64,000 nucleotides of DNA, from positions 186,001-250,000 of IMG/VR virus record IMGVR_UViG_3300009545_000018; one strand, given 5' to 3'. Below are positions 23,841 to 63,200 of this stretch, piece after piece (the first letter of the stretch is position 1; the number at the start of each line of letters is the position of its first letter). The notes below the pieces were generated by a model. The model was not told the origin of the DNA, did not search any database, and was given only the letters and a program-made list of their open reading frames with translations. Both the position numbers and the translations under genes were made by a program.

Positions 23841-23914
23841 GCTGATTTAGTATAGTGGTATTACCCCGCCCTTGTAACGCGGTCACAACAGTTCGATTCT
23901 GTTAATCAGCTCCA
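23841..23914 (+). tRNA. tRNA-Thr(UGU)
   Basis: Cloverleaf: GCTGATT/AATCAGC acceptor, anticodon loop CT-TGT-AA (C31:C39 mismatch), TTCGATT T-loop, encoded CCA. Confidence 0.9.
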
Positions 23915-23981
23915 ATAGATATTGAGAATAAAGAGTAATGAAATGTAACATTATTCTCAACATTTCAGCAATATCTAATAC

Positions 23982-24056
23982 GCTGTGGTAATTCAGTGAT
24001 AGAATCCCTGCATGGTAAGCAGGTTGTCGCGGGTTTGATTCCCGCCCACAGCTCCA
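23982..24056 (+). tRNA. tRNA-Thr(GGU)
   Basis: GCTGTGG/CCACAGC acceptor, CCTGC-ATGGTAA-GCAGG anticodon arm, GCGGG-TTTGATT-CCCGC T arm, CCA. Confidence 0.9.
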
Positions 24057-24279: not shown

Positions 24280-24633
24280 GGGATCGACATAGTTTCGACG
24301 TGGTTTGAAGTATTGAATTGCAAGTCCCTAATTATTGTCAAAGGGTAATATAAACAATAAACGTTCAAATGCAAACGACAATAGCATTGCTCCATTAGCA
24401 CAAGTTGCTTGATGGATACCTTGAGATGAGATATTTTTGGTAATCAAAAAGGTATTAACCCACTAAAAATAGTTCTTAAATTATCTATGGATTTAAGAAT
24501 AAAATAAACATTAGATAGCCTGTAAAGCAAATTTTACAAATGTTGTTAATTACATTCTTAATTAACTAAACTTGTGAATGATTTTCAATATGAATTATCA
24601 CGGATTCCGGGGCAGTACCGGACGATTCCACCA
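24280..24633 (+). ncRNA. ssrA: tmRNA, one-piece; tag (A)ANDNSIAPLAQVA
   Basis: 5' GGGATCG pairs with 3' CGATTCC-ACCA giving a G3:U70 Ala determinant; TTCGAC 5' motif; tag ORF GCAAACGAC...GCT TGA at 24371-24412; T arm TCCGG-GGCAGTA-CCGGA. Confidence 0.92.
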
Positions 24634-25788: not shown

Positions 25789-25819
25789 TATTGTTATATA
25801 TAAATTAGGAGAAAATTAA

Positions 25820-26401
25820 ATGTTATAGAACGATCTAATCAAAGATATGCAAAACTGCTTACAAACACAAGGGCAGTCTATTTATCAGCACGGGCTCTCA
25901 GTAAAAGAGCATTATTTTGATTTATTATTTATGTTAAAAGAAAATACCGCACTTCCAGGATGGAGGTTACCAGAATGGTTTTTTCAATATCGAGAACAAA
26001 TATTAAATATATTATTGCCCGAAGATATTGTTAAAGAATATCTTATATTTCATGATTGCGGCAAACCTTATTGTTTACTAATTGATGAAGAAGGTGGTAG
26101 ACATTTTCCAAATCATGCAGATAAATCTTATGATATTTGGTTAAAAGTGGGCGGCAATATACAAGCAGCTAAACTTATGAAAATGGATATGTTAATTCAT
26201 AAAATGAAGGCTGTAGATATTGACCAATTTATAAAAAATCCAGAAGCTATTACACTACTTTTAAGTGGATTAGCTGAGACACACTCTAACGCTAAAATGT
26301 TTGGAGGAATAGAATCAGAATCATTTAAGATTAAGTGGAATCAAATTAACAAACGTGGTAAGGTTATTTGTAACAAATTATTTAATACAAAGGAAAAATA
26401 A
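25820..26401 (+). CDS. HD-domain protein with in-frame amber at codon 3 (ORF track starts it at 25847)
   Basis: AGGAG (25807-11), 8 nt, then ATG TTA TAG AAC GAT CTA ATC AAA GAT ATG in frame with the 184-aa ORF; QHG...FHDCGKP...HFPNHA HD motifs. Confidence 0.75.
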
Positions 26402-26746
26402 ATGTCGTAGATTCAATCAAATGATAAATTATATGTTGTGACTCGTGAAGATATTTCAAAAGGATATCAAGGAGTGCAAGGTATACACGCAGCAATTCAG
26501 TTTGCAATTGAACATCCTCAACTTAATAAAGAATGGTTTGAGAAATCTAATTATTTAGGATTTCTATCTGTAAATAATGAAAAAGATTTATTAGATTTGT
26601 CTCAAAAAGCATTAGAACTAGGAATTGAGTTGTCTATATTTAGAGAGCCAGATATAGATAATGCAGTAACTGCAATAGCCTTGGCGCCAGGCAAGAAAAG
26701 TAAAAAACTTTGCAGCAAACTAAATTTAGCTATGAAAGAAAAATAA
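26402..26746 (+). CDS. PTH2-fold (peptidyl-tRNA hydrolase 2/PTRHD1-like) protein with in-frame amber at codon 3 (ORF track starts it at 26438)
   Basis: AAGGA SD and TAA-ATG coupling; ATG TCG TAG ATT CAA TCA AAT GAT AAA TTA TAT GTT GTG; KLYVVTREDI...QGIHAA...FREPDI...VTAIALAP. Confidence 0.8.
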
Positions 26747-26752
26747 ATTTAT

Positions 26753-26874
26753 GCGTCAGTAGCTCAATTAAAGTGAAAGTAGTACATTAACGTGATGTAT
26801 AATAAATGAGTATCTTAAGACCGAGCAGTCCATATTTAATGGAAAGGATGCAAGTGCAAATCTTGCCTGGCGCC
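26753..26874 (+). tRNA. tRNA-like RNA (UUU, Lys-like) with a 57-nt D-loop
   Basis: GCGTCAG/CTGGCGC acceptor, D-stem GCTC (26762-65)/GAGC (26823-26), anticodon loop TA-TTT-AA, GCAAG-TGCAAAT-CTTGC T arm; no encoded CCA. Confidence 0.65.
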
Positions 26875-26880
26875 CTATAT

Positions 26881-26954
26881 TCTCCTGTAAGTTCAGCGGT
26901 TAGAACTATGCTCCCTAAAAGCATTGGTCGTAGGTTCGAATCCTACCAGGAGAG
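26881..26954 (+). tRNA. Amber suppressor tRNA (CUA) #1, U1-A72/G73 body
   Basis: TCTCCTG/CAGGAGA acceptor, ATGCT-CCCTAAA-AGCAT anticodon arm (CTA at 26915-17), GTAGG-TTCGAAT-CCTAC T arm; C33; followed by CAA, not CCA. Confidence 0.8.
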
Positions 26955-26959
26955 CAAAT

Positions 26960-27035
26960 GGTTTGTTAGCTCAGTGATTAGAGCAGAGGATTCTAAAACC
27001 TTTGGTCGTGAGTTTGAATCTCACACAAACCACCA
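26960..27035 (+). tRNA. Amber suppressor tRNA (CUA) #2
   Basis: GGTTTGT/ACAAACC acceptor, GCTC/GAGC D-stem, loop TT-CTA-AA (26993-95), GTGAG-TTTGAAT-CTCAC T arm, A73 and encoded CCA. Confidence 0.85.
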
Positions 27036-27545
27036 ATGAAAAAGTTGCTATTAGAAATAGAATTGATACCAGCATCTTCATGGTATAGCAACGTCAGATC
27101 AAACGTAACTAAAAAGCAATGGGATATTATTAGAAATAAAGTTTATTCTGAAGCCTATAATCTTTGTCAAATATGTGGTGAGCAAGGAAACAAGCACCCA
27201 GTTGAATGTCATGAAATGTGGGAATTTGATGATTTTAAATTAATACAAAAATTAATAGGAATGATAGCATTATGTCCAATGTGTCACGCTACTAAACATT
27301 ATGGTTTATCAAAAATACAAGGTAAAGAAGAGATAATTTTTAATCATTTTATAAAAATTAATAATATTGACAAGGTAGCGGTAAAGCACTACATTGATTC
27401 TGTTTTTAAAATTTGGGAAACACGTAGCCAAAAAGAATGGGAATTAGATATTTCCATATTAAAAAACTATGGAGTAGATATTTATGAATCCAATAATTCA
27501 AAAAAAGATAGAGTTGTTAAAAAATCAACAACAAAAAATAGATGA
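27036..27545 (+). CDS. HNH-type (treble-clef) nuclease-like protein
   Basis: IELIPASSWYSNVRS, CQICG, ECHEMW, IALCPMCH. Confidence 0.78.
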   Translation: MKKLLLEIELIPASSWYSNVRSNVTKKQWDIIRNKVYSEAYNLCQICGEQGNKHPVECHEMWEFDDFKLIQKLIGMIALCPMCHATKHYGLSKIQGKEEIIFNHFIKINNIDKVAVKHYIDSVFKIWETRSQKEWELDISILKNYGVDIYESNNSKKDRVVKKSTTKNR

Positions 27546-27885
27546 AGAAAAAGCAAAACAAGAACAAATTAGACGACAAATTGAATTGAAAAAAATAGAA
27601 AGCAAAGTCCCAGAAGCCAAAATTTGGGTCGAAAACTTTTTATTTGATTTAATAGCCAAAGAAGATTTAAAAATAGATGATTTAAATAAACATAGATATA
27701 GAGATGAACATCTGCCTAAGGAATTAGAGTTGTTTCATATCCCTGATAATATTCCTATCGAATCTATAGTTAAAGCAATTAAAACTTTTAGTGGTCTTTA
27801 TGTAAGAGAATCTTGGCAACCTGCCACACATGATATTGATGGTCCTAGTTATCCAGCATATATGGCATATTATGTTAGATGGTAA
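27484..27885 (+). CDS. Hypothetical protein with N-terminal coiled coil
   Basis: GGAG SD; 133 aa. Confidence 0.65.
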   Translation: MNPIIQKKIELLKNQQQKIDEEKAKQEQIRRQIELKKIESKVPEAKIWVENFLFDLIAKEDLKIDDLNKHRYRDEHLPKELELFHIPDNIPIESIVKAIKTFSGLYVRESWQPATHDIDGPSYPAYMAYYVRW

Positions 27886-28199: not shown

Positions 28200-28718
28200 A
28201 TGATTACTAAGAATAGAGTTAATTTTCAAATAAAAGTGTTGCAAGTTAGATTGATTGATAGTAATGGAGATAATGTTGGAATAATTTCAACACAAGAAGC
28301 TCTAAAAAAAGCCAGAGAACAAAACTTAGATCTTGTTGAAATTAACTCTAAATCATTGCCGCCGGTTTGTAAAATTATTGATTATGGTAAGTTTAAGTAT
28401 GATGAAAAAAAGAAACAAAACGAAGCTAAAAAGAATCATAAAGTTCAAGAATTAAAAGAAATTACTTTTCGCCCTACTACTGATGAGAATGATTTAAATC
28501 ATAAATTGGCTTCTGCACGGAGTTTTCTTGAAGAAGGCGACAAAGTAAAATTTACTATTAGATTTAGAGGTAGAGAAATTGTTCATCCAGAAGTAGGTAG
28601 AGATAGAATTCTTTGGTTATTAGAACAATTAAAGGACATAATTGCAGTACCTCCTCCAATTTCAATGGAAGGGAAATTCATGTCGGTTGTAGTAATGCCA
28701 AGTAAAAAAGGTAACTAA
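28200..28718 (+). CDS. infC: Translation initiation factor IF-3
   Basis: RVNFQI..VRLID, ALKKAREQNLDLVEI, PPVCKIIDYGKFKY, KEITFRP, GDKVKFTIRFRGRE. Confidence 0.95.
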   Translation: MITKNRVNFQIKVLQVRLIDSNGDNVGIISTQEALKKAREQNLDLVEINSKSLPPVCKIIDYGKFKYDEKKKQNEAKKNHKVQELKEITFRPTTDENDLNHKLASARSFLEEGDKVKFTIRFRGREIVHPEVGRDRILWLLEQLKDIIAVPPPISMEGKFMSVVVMPSKKGN

Positions 28719-60218: not shown

Positions 60219-63200
60219 ATGACTGATTTTGTATCTTTGCATAATCAAACTGATTATTCTATATTAGATTCTACTATTGCCACTAAAGATCTTTTTAAAC
60301 GAGCTAAAGAGCTTGGACAACAAGCGATAGCCATTACTGATCATGGAACTTTGGCAGCAGCTTGGGATGCTCTAAAGGCTTCCAGAGAAACTGGTGTTAA
60401 GCTTATTATGGGGTGTGAATGTTATTTTGTTAATGATGCAAAAAATTTGGAAGGTAAGTTTAGACATATAATTCTATTAGCTAAAAATGCGATAGGTTAT
60501 AGAAACTTATTAACTATTAATAAAAAAGGTTTTGATCAAGGTTCTTTTATTGGTAAAAGAGTGTATCCATTAGTCGATTGGAATTTGTTAGAACAATACA
60601 AAGATGGATTAATTTGTCTAACTGCATGCGGTAATGGAATTGTGTCGCAACTTTTGAATACTGGTAAAATGGATGAGGCAGAAAAAACACTATTAAAATT
60701 AAAAGATTTATTTGGAGATAATTTGGGAATTGAAATTCAACCAAATAATATGAAGCGTGGTGGTAATATTTACAATGATGAGATTGATCAGTTTTTTCTT
60801 AATAGACAATTAATACTCTTGGGAAAAAAACATAATATTAAAATTGTTCCGGCTTGTAATTCTCATTATTTAACAAAGCAAGATCATGAGGTTCATGATG
60901 TATTGTTAGCTATTGGATCTCATCAGCCTGTTTTTTCTAACTTTAGATTAAAATATCCTGTATCAGATTTTTATTTAAAATCGGGCGAGGAAGTAGAATC
61001 ATTTTTTGCCAGAAATTATGATGCTATGTATGGAACTGGTTTTGCAAAAAGTTTATGTGACAATACTATTTATTTTGCAAATATGTGTGAAATGCCAGAT
61101 TGGATTGATCCAAAATATTCTAATCCTTCTGGTAAAGAGTTACCAGTTTTTCCAATTACGGAGGAAGAAGATTATTCTGATTTTCTTATATGGAAAAATA
61201 ATCAAACCGATGAAATTAAAATCTTACAAGATGATAACTTATATTTAAGATTTAGGTGTGCACAGGCATATGCAGTTAAAATATTAAATCTAAGTCCAGA
61301 AGATAAAAAAATATATGATGATCGTATTGCTGAAGAAATTGATGTACTAGAATTTCATGGATTTTCTAGTTACATGTTAATTGTAGCAGATTATATTAAT
61401 TGGGCACGAAAAAATGATATTGCAGTGGGTGAGGGGAGAGGATCAGTCGGTGGATCTTTAATTGCTTACTTATTAGGAATTCATCAAGCAGATCCTATTA
61501 AATATAATTTAATTTTTGCTAGATTTCATAATAAAGAAAAATCTAGCTTTCCAGACATTGATACAGATTTCGCCCCTTCTGGTCGGGCATTAGTACAAGA
61601 ATATTTGCGTAAAAAATATGGCGAAGATCATGTAGCTCATGTTTCTAACGTTAATACTATCACGCCCAAAGTATATGCCCGGGACATTTCAAGATCTTGT
61701 GAACTCGGTGGCTCTAGAGAAGATGCAATAAAGATTGGCAATGATGTTGCTGATTGTTTGCCGGGAGATATCAAATCTATTGAAGAAGCCTTAATTAAGG
61801 TTCCATTATTTACAGAATATGTAAAAAAATATCCACAATTTGAAAAATACAAAAGTATTTGTGGTAAGTTTAGAGCTTGGTCTACACATGCGGGTGGTAT
61901 TATTATATCTGCTAGACCATTAACTGGACTTGTACCATTACGTCGAGATAAAGATGGCTCTTTAGCCTTAGAATATGATAAAGAAAAAGCAGAAGAGAAT
62001 GGTTTGGTCAAGATGGATACATTAGGATTATCTACTCTTGATATTATTGGTCAAACAATTAAACTTATTAAAGCAACAGGAAAAGATATTACTCCATTGG
62101 AGGCTTTGAGTTATGATAGTTATGATGAAAAATCTTATGATTTAGTTTCCAAAGGCGATACGTTTTGTGTTTTTCAATTGGGAACTTCTGGCGGAACTAT
62201 TGATTTATGTAGAAAAATAAAACCGAAATCCATTAATGATATTAGCTATATTAATTCATTAGCTCGTCCTTCTGCTAGGGATATGCGTGAGGATTTTATT
62301 TCTACCAAAGATGGAAAAAAGCCATTTAGTTTATTGCATCCAAACTTAGCTAGAGCATTTAATAATACTTTTGGTTTTGGTTTGTATGAAGAGAGTTTAA
62401 TGTATCTTGCCCAAGATATAGCTGGGTGGACTTTGCACTCTGCCGATCGTTTAAGAAAACTTACTAAAGAAAAAGGAAAGAATCCCAAAAGGGCTCAACA
62501 ATGGAGACTAGAGTTTATTACTGATTCAGTTAAGAATGGTGTAAATGAAGAAATAGCAAAACGTATTTGGGATGAAGTAGTAGAGAAATTTCAGGGTTAT
62601 GGTTTTAATCAATCGCATTCCGTTTTATATTCTATGACTAGTTATAAGACTGCTTATCTGAAGGCACATTATCCAATTGAATTTTTGCTAGCTAATTTAA
62701 TGGCTGAAGTTAAATCTAATGCCCCTGATGCTAAAGCTAATATTGAAAAAATTAAAAAAGAAATTAGACAACATAAAGTAAAAATTATTGCACCTGATAT
62801 TAATAAGTCCTTGTTATCTTATACTATGGAAGGTGAAGATAAATTAATTACTGGATTAGATGCTCTTAAATATGTAGGCGAAGATGCCATTAATGATATT
62901 ATTTTAAAAAGACCCTTTCATTCTTTTCTAGATTTTATGTCTAGAGTTGATTCTAAAAAGGTTAGAGCCAATACTATTCAAGCTTTAGCCGCATCAGGGT
63001 GCTTGGATGCTTTTAAAATTTCTAGAAAACATATGTTTTTATATTGTTCAGATTATCGTAAAAAACTTCAGGTTTGGATGAAAAAACATGATCCTACTAA
63101 AGAAGAATTTATTTATCCATGGACTTCTGAAGAAGATTGGACTATACCAGAAAAATATGCATTAGAAACATATTATTTAAATGAATCATTCGTGTGTAAG

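What the first reader, a model, noticed from the sequence alone, without database searches (positions are those of the whole stretch)
26881..27035. Two different amber-suppressor tRNA bodies side by side
Seen: #1 has U1-A72, C2-G71, G73, C33 and an extra base before the D-stem; its body resembles E. coli tRNA-Asn/Gln-type acceptors and it lacks encoded CCA. #2 has G1-C72, G2-C71, U3-A70, A73, canonical U33, an A31:A39 mismatch and encoded CCA. In #2 the G19:C56 tertiary pair appears as A19:U56 (D-loop AGTGATTA, T-loop TTTGAAT), a compensatory change that suggests selection on structure. Inference: different synthetases may charge them, so UAG could be decoded as two amino acids or with two efficiencies.
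Basis: partly seen in the sequence, partly recalled or inferred. Interest (0 to 1): 0.7.

Follow-up and report, generated by a model that had tools for sequence, protein, structure and literature searches.

The report
Amber suppressor tRNAs gating neighbour genes
Two genuine stop-codon-reading (amber suppressor) tRNA genes of a 448-kb soil phage lie next to two tRNA-maintenance genes that each carry a conserved UAG stop just after the start codon, so the tRNAs probably switch those neighbours on and do not recode the whole genome.

Summary
They belong to two lineages conserved in dozens of related huge phages, with many compensatory stem changes and an invariant anticodon.

The genome (447,763 bp, rhizosphere virus record) uses the standard code. 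TAG ends about 14 long ORFs and no long ORF is interrupted by TAG.

The new result is their likely target. The two genes directly upstream each begin with a ribosome-binding site, ATG, one codon, then TAG, then conserved coding sequence.
- One is an HD-domain protein like the C-terminal part of tRNA nucleotidyltransferases (25820-26401).
- The other is a Pth2-type peptidyl-tRNA hydrolase (26402-26746).

The same leader occurs in 52 of 73 distinct Pth2-like phage genes, with 30 different leaders and TAG invariant. It co-occurs with a tRNA(CUA) within 4 kb (47/52 against 4/21). It is also present in published huge phages and in cultured Xanthomonas phage XacN1, whose authors found no targets for its two suppressor tRNAs.

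Best reading: a self-contained, suppression-gated cassette. The inserted amino acid is unresolved; one site hints at Gln. Nothing has been tested experimentally.

The parts
26881..26954 (+). tRNA(CUA) #1, lineage A: U1-A72, G73, C33, no encoded CCA
   Evidence: ARAGORN. Rfam tRNA 58.4 bits. Cloverleaf minimum-free-energy fold. Lineage alignment has compensatory changes in 12 of 14 pairs. C33 is also present in L068 and L098.
26960..27035 (+). tRNA(CUA) #2, lineage B: G1-C72, A73, CCA encoded, A19:U56 covariation
   Evidence: ARAGORN. Rfam tRNA 63.9 bits. Lineage alignment of 15 sequences has compensatory changes in 14 of 19 pairs. The best full-length E. coli match is tRNA-Lys at 72% identity.
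26402..26746 (+). Pth2-type peptidyl-tRNA hydrolase gene with amber leader: ATG 26402, TCG, TAG 26408-26410, conserved coding sequence from ATT 26411, stop TAA 26744-26746; AAGGA ribosome-binding site at 26390-26394
   Evidence: Sequence read directly. Pfam PTH2 31.8 bits against a cut-off of 23. phrog_1866 aligns from residue 2 of the post-TAG product. AlphaFold2 pLDDT 96.8, and the first beta strand (KLYVVTR) lies upstream of the first canonical start codon. Foldseek matches archaeal Pth2 structures at E about 1e-7 and TM 0.7-0.8. The leader is conserved in relatives.
25820..26401 (+). HD-domain gene (like the C-terminal domain of tRNA nucleotidyltransferases) with amber leader: ATG 25820, TTA, TAG 25826-25828, then six conserved codons, an internal ATG at 25847, stop TAA 26399-26401; AGGAG at 25807-25811
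   Evidence: Sequence read directly. The leader is found in 17-18 of 22 distinct homologues. TAG-less homologues L027 and L033 translate the same L-I-x-D-M N-terminus from a plain ATG. AlphaFold2 pLDDT 93.5, with residues 2-9 after the TAG forming a confident helix. The best structure and sequence matches are the C-terminal HD part of CC-adding and A-adding enzymes.
26753..26874 (+). Third tRNA-like gene with a 54-nt insertion in the D loop; anticodon loop UAUUUAA
   Evidence: Rfam tRNA 38.7 bits against a gathering score of 29 in a focused search. ARAGORN and the whole-window Rfam run missed it.
24280..24633 (+). Phage tmRNA, part of the conserved translation module
   Evidence: Rfam tmRNA 51.4 bits against a gathering score of 47. 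ARAGORN calls tmRNAs with tag peptides at the same place in relatives.
23841..24056 (+). Two tRNA-Thr genes (UGU, GGU) that open the conserved module
   Evidence: ARAGORN and Rfam. The same Thr cluster occurs in relatives.
27036..27545 (+). HNH endonuclease gene that starts at the base after the CCA of tRNA #2
   Evidence: phrog_5200 at E 1e-52. ORF list.
27469..27885 (+). Possible third leader: ATG GAG TAG (27475-27477) ATA TTT ATG (27484), followed by a 133-aa ORF of unknown function
   Evidence: The pattern is seen in the window and in L010. It is ambiguous, because an ATG follows two codons after the TAG and no ribosome-binding site was detected.
28200..28718 (+). Phage translation initiation factor IF-3 gene (context)
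   Evidence: Pfam IF3_N at 104 bits and IF3_C at 94 bits.

Best explanation
Both genes encode functional amber-suppressor tRNAs of a huge phage that otherwise uses the standard genetic code.

Their conserved clients are the two genes immediately upstream:
- a stand-alone HD domain of the kind found at the C-terminus of tRNA nucleotidyltransferases;
- a Pth2-type peptidyl-tRNA hydrolase.

Each client starts with a ribosome-binding site, AUG, one to four codons, and then an in-frame UAG before the conserved protein sequence. Full-length protein can therefore be made only when a CUA tRNA has been transcribed, processed, given its CCA end, charged, and can beat release factor 1 at that codon. The four genes together form a self-contained, suppression-gated cassette.

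The phage's own RF2 reads UAA and UGA but not UAG. Together with the rarity of TAG as a phage stop, this keeps the rest of phage translation safe.

Shown by computation: the tRNA structures and their conservation; the invariant in-frame TAG; its linkage to tRNA(CUA); the folds of the two proteins; use of the standard code.

Inferred:
- that these tRNAs read those UAGs;
- that at least one inserts Gln;
- that the genes are co-transcribed;
- the purpose. My guess is that production of two enzymes acting on tRNA 3' ends is scaled to, or timed by, suppressor activity. These enzymes could clear peptidyl-tRNA and damaged tRNA ends that arise when UAG read-through sends ribosomes past host stop codons. 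The phage tmRNA lies 2 kb upstream.
For: (1) The tRNAs are real and under selection. Rfam scores are 58.4 and 63.9 bits. The two lineages show compensatory changes in 12/14 and 14/19 pairs with an invariant CUA. They occupy the same syntenic slot in about 22 of 27 related loci.

(2) The genome is not recoded. Stops of ORFs of 150 codons or more are TAA 219, TGA 81, TAG 14. TAG-terminated ORFs are followed by another stop after a median of 6.5 codons.

(3) Pth2-like gene. The conserved N-terminus, including the first beta strand, lies between the TAG and the first canonical start codon. The codon after the TAG is often GTT, AAC, AGC or ACA, which are not start codons.

(4) 52 of 73 distinct Pth2-like genes carry an ATG-(1-4 codons)-TAG leader. 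There are 30 different leaders and none has TAA or TGA in place of TAG. 47/52 gated genes have a tRNA(CUA) within 4 kb, against 4/21 ungated (odds ratio 40, p = 6e-9). Ungated loci with 16 and 19 tRNAs have no CUA tRNA.

(5) HD gene. 17-18 of 22 homologues are gated. The ribosome-binding site precedes the leader ATG, not the internal ATG. TAG-less homologues translate the same N-terminus.

(6) Genome-wide, such leaders with a strict ribosome-binding site number TAG 3 of 11, TAA 0 of 39, TGA 1 of 16. Two of the three TAG cases are these two genes.

(7) The same cassette occurs in unrelated arrangements. L007 has tRNA(CUA), then gated Pth2, then gated HD. L006 has tRNA(CUA), then gated canonical Pth2, then HD. 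LR756500, LR756501 and LR756504 also have it.

(8) XacN1 ORF364 is an HD-Pth2 fusion preceded by AGAGGA, then ATG AAG TAG.

(9) RF2 with SPF and GGQ motifs is the only class-I release factor hit in the genome. The phage has two PolyA_pol nucleotidyltransferases that could add CCA to tRNA #1. No terminator-like site lies on the + strand between the Pth2 stop and the tRNAs.
Against: There is no expression, processing, charging or proteomic data. Only one DNA run holds this sequence, and no RNA run was listed.

The association statistic is inflated by shared ancestry, although leader and flanking codons have diverged.

In the HD gene, and in XacN1 ORF364, an in-frame ATG lies 4-7 codons after the TAG. 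A shorter protein could be made there without read-through.

Some exceptions to the linkage exist.
- L028 has a gated HD gene, an ungated Pth2 gene and no tRNA(CUA) nearby.
- L003 and L004 have a tRNA(CUA) beside an ungated Pth2 gene.
- Five gated loci show no tRNA(CUA) within 4 kb.

Other open points:
- C33 in tRNA #1 departs from the near-universal U33.
- The biological purpose of the gate is guesswork.
- The inserted amino acid is unknown.
Confidence: 0.65

Rival explanations
1. The main job of the suppressors is global. They read through UAG stops of host or competing-phage genes as part of takeover or interference. The two leaders are only a secondary feedback device or a by-product.
For: Suppressor tRNAs occur beside tmRNA in several phages, and with an ungated Pth2 gene in L003 and L004. 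Phage RF2 and TAG-poor phage stops would protect the phage from its own suppressors. A Pth2 enzyme and a tmRNA are what one would want for clearing up after read-through.
Against: No host is known, so host UAG usage cannot be examined. The tight and invariant placement of TAG in two neighbouring genes shows direct selection on cis targets. This rival is compatible with the gate and does not replace it.
Confidence: 0.25
2. The ATG-x-TAG elements are tiny upstream reading frames used for translational coupling or re-initiation. The real start is the codon after the TAG (often AUU) or a later start. The neighbouring tRNA(CUA) genes are coincidental.
For: 32 of 52 codons after the TAG are AUU, AUC, AUA, AUG or CUG, which can initiate weakly. 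The HD gene always has an ATG 4-7 codons later. Mycobacteriophages Catera and Myrna have ATG TAG GTG or GTG TAG GTG, where GTG can start. The phage encodes IF-3, which governs the use of non-canonical starts.
Against: 20 of 52 have GUU, GUA, AAC, AGC, ACA, AAA, GAA, AAG or ACC after the TAG, which are not start codons. For coupling, any stop codon would serve. TAA makes up 70% of this phage's stops, yet none of 30 Pth2 leaders or 17 HD leaders has TAA or TGA. The link to tRNA(CUA) is strong and specific to that anticodon. The ribosome-binding site sits before the leader ATG.
Confidence: 0.1
3. The phage uses genetic code 15 (TAG = Gln) for a block of late genes, as in Lak, crAss-like and other recoded phages. 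The tRNAs serve that recoding.
For: The toolkit matches published TAG-recoded phages: tRNA(CUA), RF2, low GC (31%), and TAG depleted as a stop. Some relatives have extra internal TAGs in the Pth2 gene (L081, L121, LR756501).
Against: Removing TAG as a stop barely lengthens ORFs anywhere in the 448 kb. Only one pair of ORFs of 100 codons or more is separated by a single TAG, and these look like two genes. About 14-16 long ORFs end in TAG followed by a nearby second stop.
Confidence: 0.03
4. The tRNA-like genes are decaying copies or have a role outside translation, such as integration sites, primers or decoys for host nucleases. ARAGORN's label 'tRNA-Pyl' might alternatively be literally true.
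For: tRNA #1 has C33, lacks CCA and has an extra base. tRNA #2 has an A31:A39 mismatch. ARAGORN labels both as Pyl.
Against: The stems are maintained by compensatory changes and the anticodon never varies. C33 recurs in other phages. The shape is an ordinary cloverleaf, unlike tRNA-Pyl. The PylS model hits only the phage LysRS, at 23-30 bits against a cut-off of 178.
Confidence: 0.03

Closest known systems
The two adjacent tRNA-Sup(CUA) genes of Xanthomonas jumbo phage XacN1 (Yoshikawa et al. 2018, PMC5852040)
   Same: XacN1 also has two neighbouring CUA tRNAs with different acceptor stems (one A73, one G73) and a tmRNA about 1 kb away, in a jumbo phage that uses the standard code. The tRNA pair aligns with the window's at 68% identity.
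   Different: The order of the A73 and G73 types is reversed, and the flanking genes are unrelated. The authors read through the 18 TAG stops and found no targets. Here a candidate target was found 200 kb away in XacN1: ORF364, an HD-Pth2 fusion with ATG AAG TAG twelve bases before its annotated start.
The 'code change module' of stop-codon-recoded phages (Borges et al., bioRxiv 10.1101/2021.08.26.457843)
   Same: In both, a phage-encoded suppressor tRNA and a release factor that spares the suppressed codon are written in standard code. Both are proposed to unlock genes that carry in-frame stops. That work also notes standard-code relatives that have acquired a suppressor tRNA.
   Different: In the published cases many structural and lysis genes carry in-frame stops. 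Here the genome is standard-code, and the only conserved in-frame TAGs lie at codons 3-7 of two tRNA-maintenance genes adjacent to the tRNAs. The arrangement is old and widespread, not a brief intermediate.
Autoregulation of E. coli prfB (RF2) through an early in-frame UGA (established knowledge, not tested here)
   Same: In both, a translation-factor gene carries an early in-frame stop codon whose fate reports the balance between termination and an alternative event.
   Different: prfB escapes by a +1 frameshift and senses its own product. Here the escape would be read-through by a dedicated tRNA encoded next door, and the products are not release factors. The phage RF2 gene itself is a single uninterrupted ORF.
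Lambda bar minigenes and host Pth (established knowledge, not tested here)
   Same: Both involve a two- to four-codon reading frame ending in a stop. Such frames are known to shed peptidyl-tRNA that Pth must recycle. Here such a frame heads a peptidyl-tRNA hydrolase gene.
   Different: The bar minigenes are free-standing and toxic when Pth is limiting. Here the mini-frame is in frame with, and fused to, the hydrolase coding sequence, and its stop is always UAG.
supE-type tRNA-Gln amber suppressors (established knowledge)
   Same: tRNA #1 shares U1:A72, G73 and C34-U35 with bacterial tRNA-Gln. One internal TAG in a relative aligns with Gln.
   Different: Positions 2:71 and 3:70 are C-G and U-A, not G-C and G-C. 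The body does not score as Gln, or as any other isotype, against the clade's own tRNAs.

Membership tests
tRNA (Rfam RF00005) | Covariance-model score at or above the gathering threshold, with all four arms present | tested here: met
   58.4 and 63.9 bits against a gathering score of 29, with full model coverage 1-71. ARAGORN agrees.
Amber suppressor tRNA | Anticodon CUA at positions 34-36 of a seven-base loop | tested here: met
   The loops are CCCUAAA and UUCUAAA. CUA is invariant in 26 related sequences.
Amber suppressor tRNA | Structure maintained by selection (compensatory changes) | tested here: met
   12 of 14 and 14 of 19 predicted pairs show changes on both sides that keep the pair.
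Amber suppressor tRNA | Processed, CCA-tailed, aminoacylated, and decoding UAG on the ribosome | not testable with these tools
   No RNA run was listed. The phage does encode two PolyA_pol-family nucleotidyltransferases.
Amber suppressor tRNA | In-frame UAG codons present in genes that must be translated | tested here: met
   Conserved TAG at codon 3 of both upstream genes. The pattern is widespread and linked to tRNA(CUA).
tRNA-Pyl (ARAGORN's label) | A PylS synthetase in the genome | tested here: not met
   TIGR02367 hits only the phage LysRS, at 23-30 bits against a cut-off of 178.
tRNA-Pyl (ARAGORN's label) | Atypical shape: six-pair anticodon stem, three-base variable loop, very small D loop | tested here: not met
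   Both have five-pair anticodon stems, five-base variable loops and 8-nt D loops.
TAG-recoded (code 15) phage | Many genes interrupted by in-frame TAG, with coding density rising when TAG is read as sense | tested here: not met
   Summed ORF length is almost unchanged without TAG as a stop. One adjacent-ORF pair is separated by TAG and looks like two genes.
TAG-recoded (code 15) phage | Accessory toolkit: tRNA(CUA), RF2, low GC, TAG rare as a stop | tested here: met
tRNA-Gln-derived (supE-like) suppressor | Gln acceptor identity: U1:A72, G73, G2:C71, G3:C70 | tested here: not met
   tRNA #1 has U1:A72 and G73, but C2:G71 and U3:A70. tRNA #2 has none of these.
tRNA-Gln-derived (supE-like) suppressor | TAG aligns with Gln in homologous proteins | tested here: inconclusive
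   L081 has TAG where 38 of 72 homologues have Q. Two other internal TAGs fall in variable E/D/K/T columns.
Pth2 peptidyl-tRNA hydrolase (Pfam PF01981) | Profile match above the curated cut-off, and the Pth2 fold over the full length | tested here: met
   31.8 bits against a cut-off of 23. Foldseek matches MJ0051, AF2095, Bit1 and SsoPth2 at E 1e-7 to 4e-6, TM 0.7-0.8, over 108-120 aligned columns.
Pth2 peptidyl-tRNA hydrolase (Pfam PF01981) | Hydrolysis of peptidyl-tRNA | not testable with these tools
HD domain of class II tRNA nucleotidyltransferases | H...HD...H...D metal-binding motifs | tested here: met
   Invariant H, HDCGKP, HFPNH, DMxIH and AExHxNA across nine homologues. The FHDxGKP block aligns to 3WFP.
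HD domain of class II tRNA nucleotidyltransferases | Fold and sequence membership | tested here: inconclusive
   The best matches are the C-terminal parts of CC-adding and A-adding enzymes, but they are weak: Foldseek E 1e-3 to 2e-2, TM by query 0.55-0.65, profile E 0.016. Pfam gives no hit.

The most novel reading that the evidence does not exclude
Huge phages from many lineages carry a previously undescribed 'amber-gated tRNA-maintenance cassette'. It consists of one or two dedicated CUA tRNAs, a Pth2 hydrolase gene and an HD gene of the tRNA-nucleotidyltransferase-tail type. In XacN1 the two protein genes are fused. Translation of these genes requires read-through of a UAG placed two to six codons after the start. 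The cassette would act as a molecular sensor of the cell's suppression-versus-RF1 balance. It may also be the ancestral foothold from which full TAG recoding (code 15) evolved, and it would explain the orphan suppressor tRNAs of standard-code jumbo phages.
Probability: 0.55. Interest if true: 0.85.

Novelty: new variant of a known kind. Interest (0 to 1): 0.78.

Why it matters
Suppressor tRNAs in phages that do not use an altered code have been a loose end. The XacN1 authors stated that they could find no target genes.

This analysis gives a concrete and testable answer. The targets are not C-terminal extensions. They are start-proximal UAG codons in two genes that standard gene callers mis-start.

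If this holds, several things follow.
- It would be a compact natural example of gene expression gated by a cis-encoded tRNA.
- It links stop-codon suppression to the enzymes that clean up tRNA 3' ends.
- It offers a plausible first step on the road from standard code to TAG recoding.
- It supplies ready-made parts (leader plus tRNA) for synthetic control of translation.
- It flags a systematic annotation error: truncated or missed starts for Pth2-like and HD genes in huge-phage genomes.

XacN1 is in culture, so the idea can be tested at the bench.

Tried and rejected
1. Genome-wide TAG recoding. ORF statistics under four stop-codon schemes, adjacent-ORF counts and coding potential after stops all argue against it.

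2. Assigning an isotype by similarity. None of these gave an answer:
- nearest neighbours among 389 labelled tRNAs from this phage and its relatives;
- a profile classifier;
- BLAST against E. coli.
Only tRNA #2 gave a weak full-length match, to tRNA-Lys.

3. A link between the phage LysRS and the A73-type suppressor.
- LysRS is present in G000, G001, G002 and G006 (G006 has only a G73-type tRNA near its Pth2 gene).
- It is absent from G007-G010, which have A73 types.
- Its presence follows kinship, so no link.

4. A phage GlnRS or GluRS: none found.

5. Homology between the genes flanking the XacN1 suppressors and the window's HD and Pth2 genes: none.

6. An unfiltered BLAST screen for in-frame TAGs across loci was swamped by conserved non-coding frames and had to be filtered.

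7. The first tally of ATG-x-stop leaders, without a ribosome-binding-site requirement, showed no TAG excess: 12/129 against 41/467 and 16/204. Only the strict version separates them.

8. Expression data: one DNA run (rhizosphere metagenome) and no RNA run.

9. The T4-type capsid family found nothing, so the phage's wider classification was not pursued.

10. Mycobacteriophage Catera and Myrna look similar, but the tRNA-like genes are atypical and a GTG follows the TAG. They were left as a lead.
Full report
**What is at the coordinates.**
- ARAGORN finds four tRNAs in the window. Two have anticodon CUA, at 26881-26955 and 26960-27035.
- Rfam's tRNA model scores them at 58.4 and 63.9 bits against a threshold of 29, with full-length alignments.
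- tRNA #1 has U1-A72, C2-G71, G73, an extra base before the D stem, C33 and no encoded CCA.
- tRNA #2 has G1-C72, G2-C71, U3-A70, A73, U33, an A31:A39 mismatch, encoded CCA, and A19 with U56.
- ARAGORN's label 'tRNA-Pyl' reflects only the anticodon. The shape is ordinary, and a PylS model hits nothing but the phage LysRS, far below its cut-off.

**The genome.**
- The window is bases 186001-250000 of a single 447,763-bp virus record, rated complete by CheckV, with 31% GC.
- The only public run holding it is a rhizosphere metagenome.
- The record carries 37 tRNAs and a tmRNA at window 24280-24633.
- Genes in the window include IF-3, trigger factor, topoisomerase I and DNA polymerase III alpha.
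- Elsewhere it encodes an RF2 with SPF and GGQ motifs, the only class-I release factor hit.
- It also encodes a full-length LysRS and two PolyA_pol-family nucleotidyltransferases.

**The phage is not TAG-recoded.**
- Treating TAG as sense barely changes ORF lengths in any 20-kb bin.
- Long ORFs end in TAA 219 times, TGA 81 times and TAG 14 times.
- ORFs ending in TAG are followed by another in-frame stop after a median of 6.5 codons, as for TAA and TGA.
- The single pair of 100-codon ORFs separated by one TAG looks like two adjacent genes.
- TAG is about 0.83 times as frequent as TGA as a trinucleotide, but about 0.17 times as frequent as a stop. That is what one expects if suppressors are active.

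**The tRNAs are conserved in two lineages.**
- A search with the neighbouring 184-aa protein found 25 related IMG/VR loci, on contigs of up to 481 kb.
- Most share one module: a tRNA-Thr cluster, tmRNA, the HD-like gene, the Pth2-like gene, one or two tRNA(CUA) genes, then tRNA-Arg(CCU).
- Where two CUA tRNAs occur, the first has G73, often with U1:A72. The second has G1:C72 and mostly A73.
- Alignments show compensatory changes in 12 of 14 pairs for lineage A and 14 of 19 for lineage B, with an invariant anticodon.
- A19 with U56 occurs in exactly two lineage-B sequences. The other 13 have G19 with C56.
- C33 is absent from the closest relative but recurs in L068 and L098.

**Amino-acid identity is unresolved.**
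- In the clade's own labelled tRNAs, textbook acceptor rules hold. U1:A72 occurs mainly in Asn (10/13) and Gln (12/15), with only isolated cases elsewhere.
- The suppressor bodies nevertheless match no isotype.
- The phage has no GlnRS- or GluRS-type enzyme.
- Its LysRS tracks close kinship, not the A73-type tRNA.
- The one useful clue is an internal TAG in relative L081, in the motif HALR-x-F, where 38 of 72 homologues have Gln.

**The unexpected result: start-proximal TAGs in the two upstream genes.**
- The ORF listing starts the Pth2-like gene at GTG 26438.
- The conserved protein sequence runs upstream of that GTG to a TAG at 26408-26410.
- That TAG is preceded by TCG, by ATG at 26402, and by AAGGA at 26390-26394.
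- The AlphaFold2 model of the post-TAG product is confident (pLDDT 96.8). Its first beta strand is encoded upstream of the GTG.
- The fold matches archaeal and human Pth2 over its full length, and phrog_1866 aligns from residue 2.
- The HD-like gene has the same layout: AGGAG, ATG 25820, TTA, TAG 25826-25828, six conserved codons, then the ATG at 25847 that the ORF finder takes as the start.
- Relatives L027 and L033 lack the TAG and translate the same L-I-x-D-M N-terminus from a plain ATG.
- That N-terminal segment is a confident helix in the model.
- The HD protein's best structural and sequence matches are the C-terminal HD part of CC-adding and A-adding tRNA nucleotidyltransferases. These matches are weak.

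**How general and how specific the leader is.**
- A profile search gave 80 more loci.
- Of 73 distinct Pth2-like genes, 52 carry ATG-(1-4 codons)-TAG directly before the conserved sequence.
- There are 30 different leaders, and none has TAA or TGA in place of TAG.
- 47 of the 52 have a tRNA(CUA) within 4 kb, against 4 of 21 ungated genes (odds ratio 40, p = 6e-9).
- Ungated loci with 16 and 19 tRNAs have no CUA tRNA.
- The p-value overstates independence, because many sequences are related.
- Of 22 distinct HD homologues, 17-18 are gated.
- In this genome, leaders with a strict ribosome-binding site number TAG 3 of 11, TAA 0 of 39 and TGA 1 of 16. Two of the three TAG cases are these two genes.
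- A third possible leader at 27469-27477 is ambiguous.

**The cassette in other phages.**
- L007 has tRNA(CUA), then gated Pth2, then gated HD.
- L006 has tRNA(CUA), then a gated canonical Pth2, then HD.
- The published huge phages LR756500, LR756501 (735 kb, two CUA tRNAs, a second internal TAG) and LR756504 also have gated Pth2 genes.
- In cultured phage XacN1, the authors reported two CUA suppressors with no identifiable targets.
- XacN1 ORF364 is a fusion of the HD and Pth2 domains. AGAGGA and ATG AAG TAG lie twelve bases before its annotated start.
- The fusion argues that the two proteins work together.

**Interpretation.**
- The simplest account is that the CUA tRNAs read these UAGs. 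The two enzymes are then made only when suppression works.
- A coupling or re-initiation role for the mini-frames does not explain three things: why the stop is always TAG in a phage that prefers TAA, why 20 of 52 following codons cannot initiate, and why the leader travels with tRNA(CUA).
- It remains possible for the HD gene and for XacN1 ORF364, where an ATG follows.
- The purpose of the gate is inferred only.
- A Pth2, an enzyme of the tRNA 3'-end type, a tmRNA and an RF2 together look like a kit for handling the side effects of read-through. Equally, the gate could be a timer or a sensor of RF1 activity.
- Compared with the model of Borges et al., this is a minimal form: standard code, two clients, in cis. 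It is evidently long-lived.

**Limits.**
- There is no RNA, protein or biochemical evidence.
- The host is unknown.
- Co-transcription rests only on the absence of a terminator-like site.
- I found no paper describing the leader, but the library searched is incomplete.

Noticed in passing
window 26753-26874 (+): A third tRNA-like gene lies between the Pth2-like stop and tRNA(CUA) #1. It scores 38.7 bits on Rfam tRNA, has a 54-nt insertion in the D loop and an anticodon loop UAUUUAA (UUU with A33). ARAGORN and the whole-window Rfam run both missed it.
   Followed up: partly
window 24280-24633 (+): A phage tmRNA (Rfam 51.4 bits) lies 2 kb upstream of the suppressors. Relatives have one at the same place, with tags such as ANDNAFAPLALAA. 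A tmRNA also lies near tRNA(CUA) in XacN1, L004 and L007.
   Followed up: partly
G000:C1:76679-78298 (outside the window): The phage encodes a full-length class II lysyl-tRNA synthetase (TIGR00499, 503.8 bits). It is present in four close relatives and absent from ten other large relatives. There is no link to the A73-type suppressor.
   Followed up: yes
G000:C1:425360-426439 (outside the window): The phage RF2 gene has SPF and GGQ motifs and is a single uninterrupted ORF, without the frameshift site of bacterial prfB. It is the only class-I release factor hit in the genome.
   Followed up: partly
G000:C1:1-40000 and 430000-447763 (outside the window): Both ends of the record have higher GC (0.37-0.42 against 0.26-0.31) and very few ORFs of 150 codons under any stop-codon scheme. 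The first ORF is a 5'-truncated sulfatase-like gene. IMG/VR flags related records as 'provirus'. The ends could be host flank, an assembly chimera, or a region of many small genes.
   Followed up: partly
L148 958-1809 = AP018399.1 243735-244595 (XacN1 ORF364): In XacN1 the HD-like and Pth2-like domains are fused into one protein annotated as hypothetical. ATG AAG TAG and a ribosome-binding site lie just upstream of the annotated start.
   Followed up: yes
L065 4983-5687 (Catera) and L066 4974-5537 (Myrna): In these cluster C mycobacteriophages, ATG TAG GTG or GTG TAG GTG lies directly before the annotated peptidyl-tRNA hydrolase gene. An atypical tRNA-like gene lies 130-250 nt downstream. ARAGORN reads it as CUA, while GenBank annotates it as tRNA-Arg or tRNA-Ser. 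It scores below the Rfam tRNA threshold.
   Followed up: partly
L063 4985-5400 (LR756501, the 735-kb phage): Its Pth2-like gene has the leader TAG and a second in-frame TAG inside the conserved body. Two tRNA(CUA) genes lie 2 kb downstream. This suggests wider TAG read-through in that phage.
   Followed up: no
window 27036-27545 (+): An HNH endonuclease gene starts at the base after the CCA of tRNA #2. This may be a homing endonuclease lodged beside the tRNA genes.
   Followed up: no
G000:C1:116454-117011 (outside the window): An HNH-like ORF next to tRNA-Ile has one in-frame TAG (71 + 106 codons). It is either a decaying homing endonuclease or another read-through client.
   Followed up: no
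G000:C1:108213-108302 and 60656-60744 (outside the window): Several of the phage's tRNAs are odd. One 90-nt gene is read with a four-base anticodon (gttt, Asn or Lys). A tRNA-Gln(UUG) of 89 nt has an insertion. The genome has no plain tRNA-Asn and no tRNA-Ser.
   Followed up: no
window 23982-24056 (+): tRNA-Thr(GGU) shows the same A19 with U56 replacement (D loop AGUGAUA, T loop UUUGAUU) as tRNA(CUA) #2.
   Followed up: no
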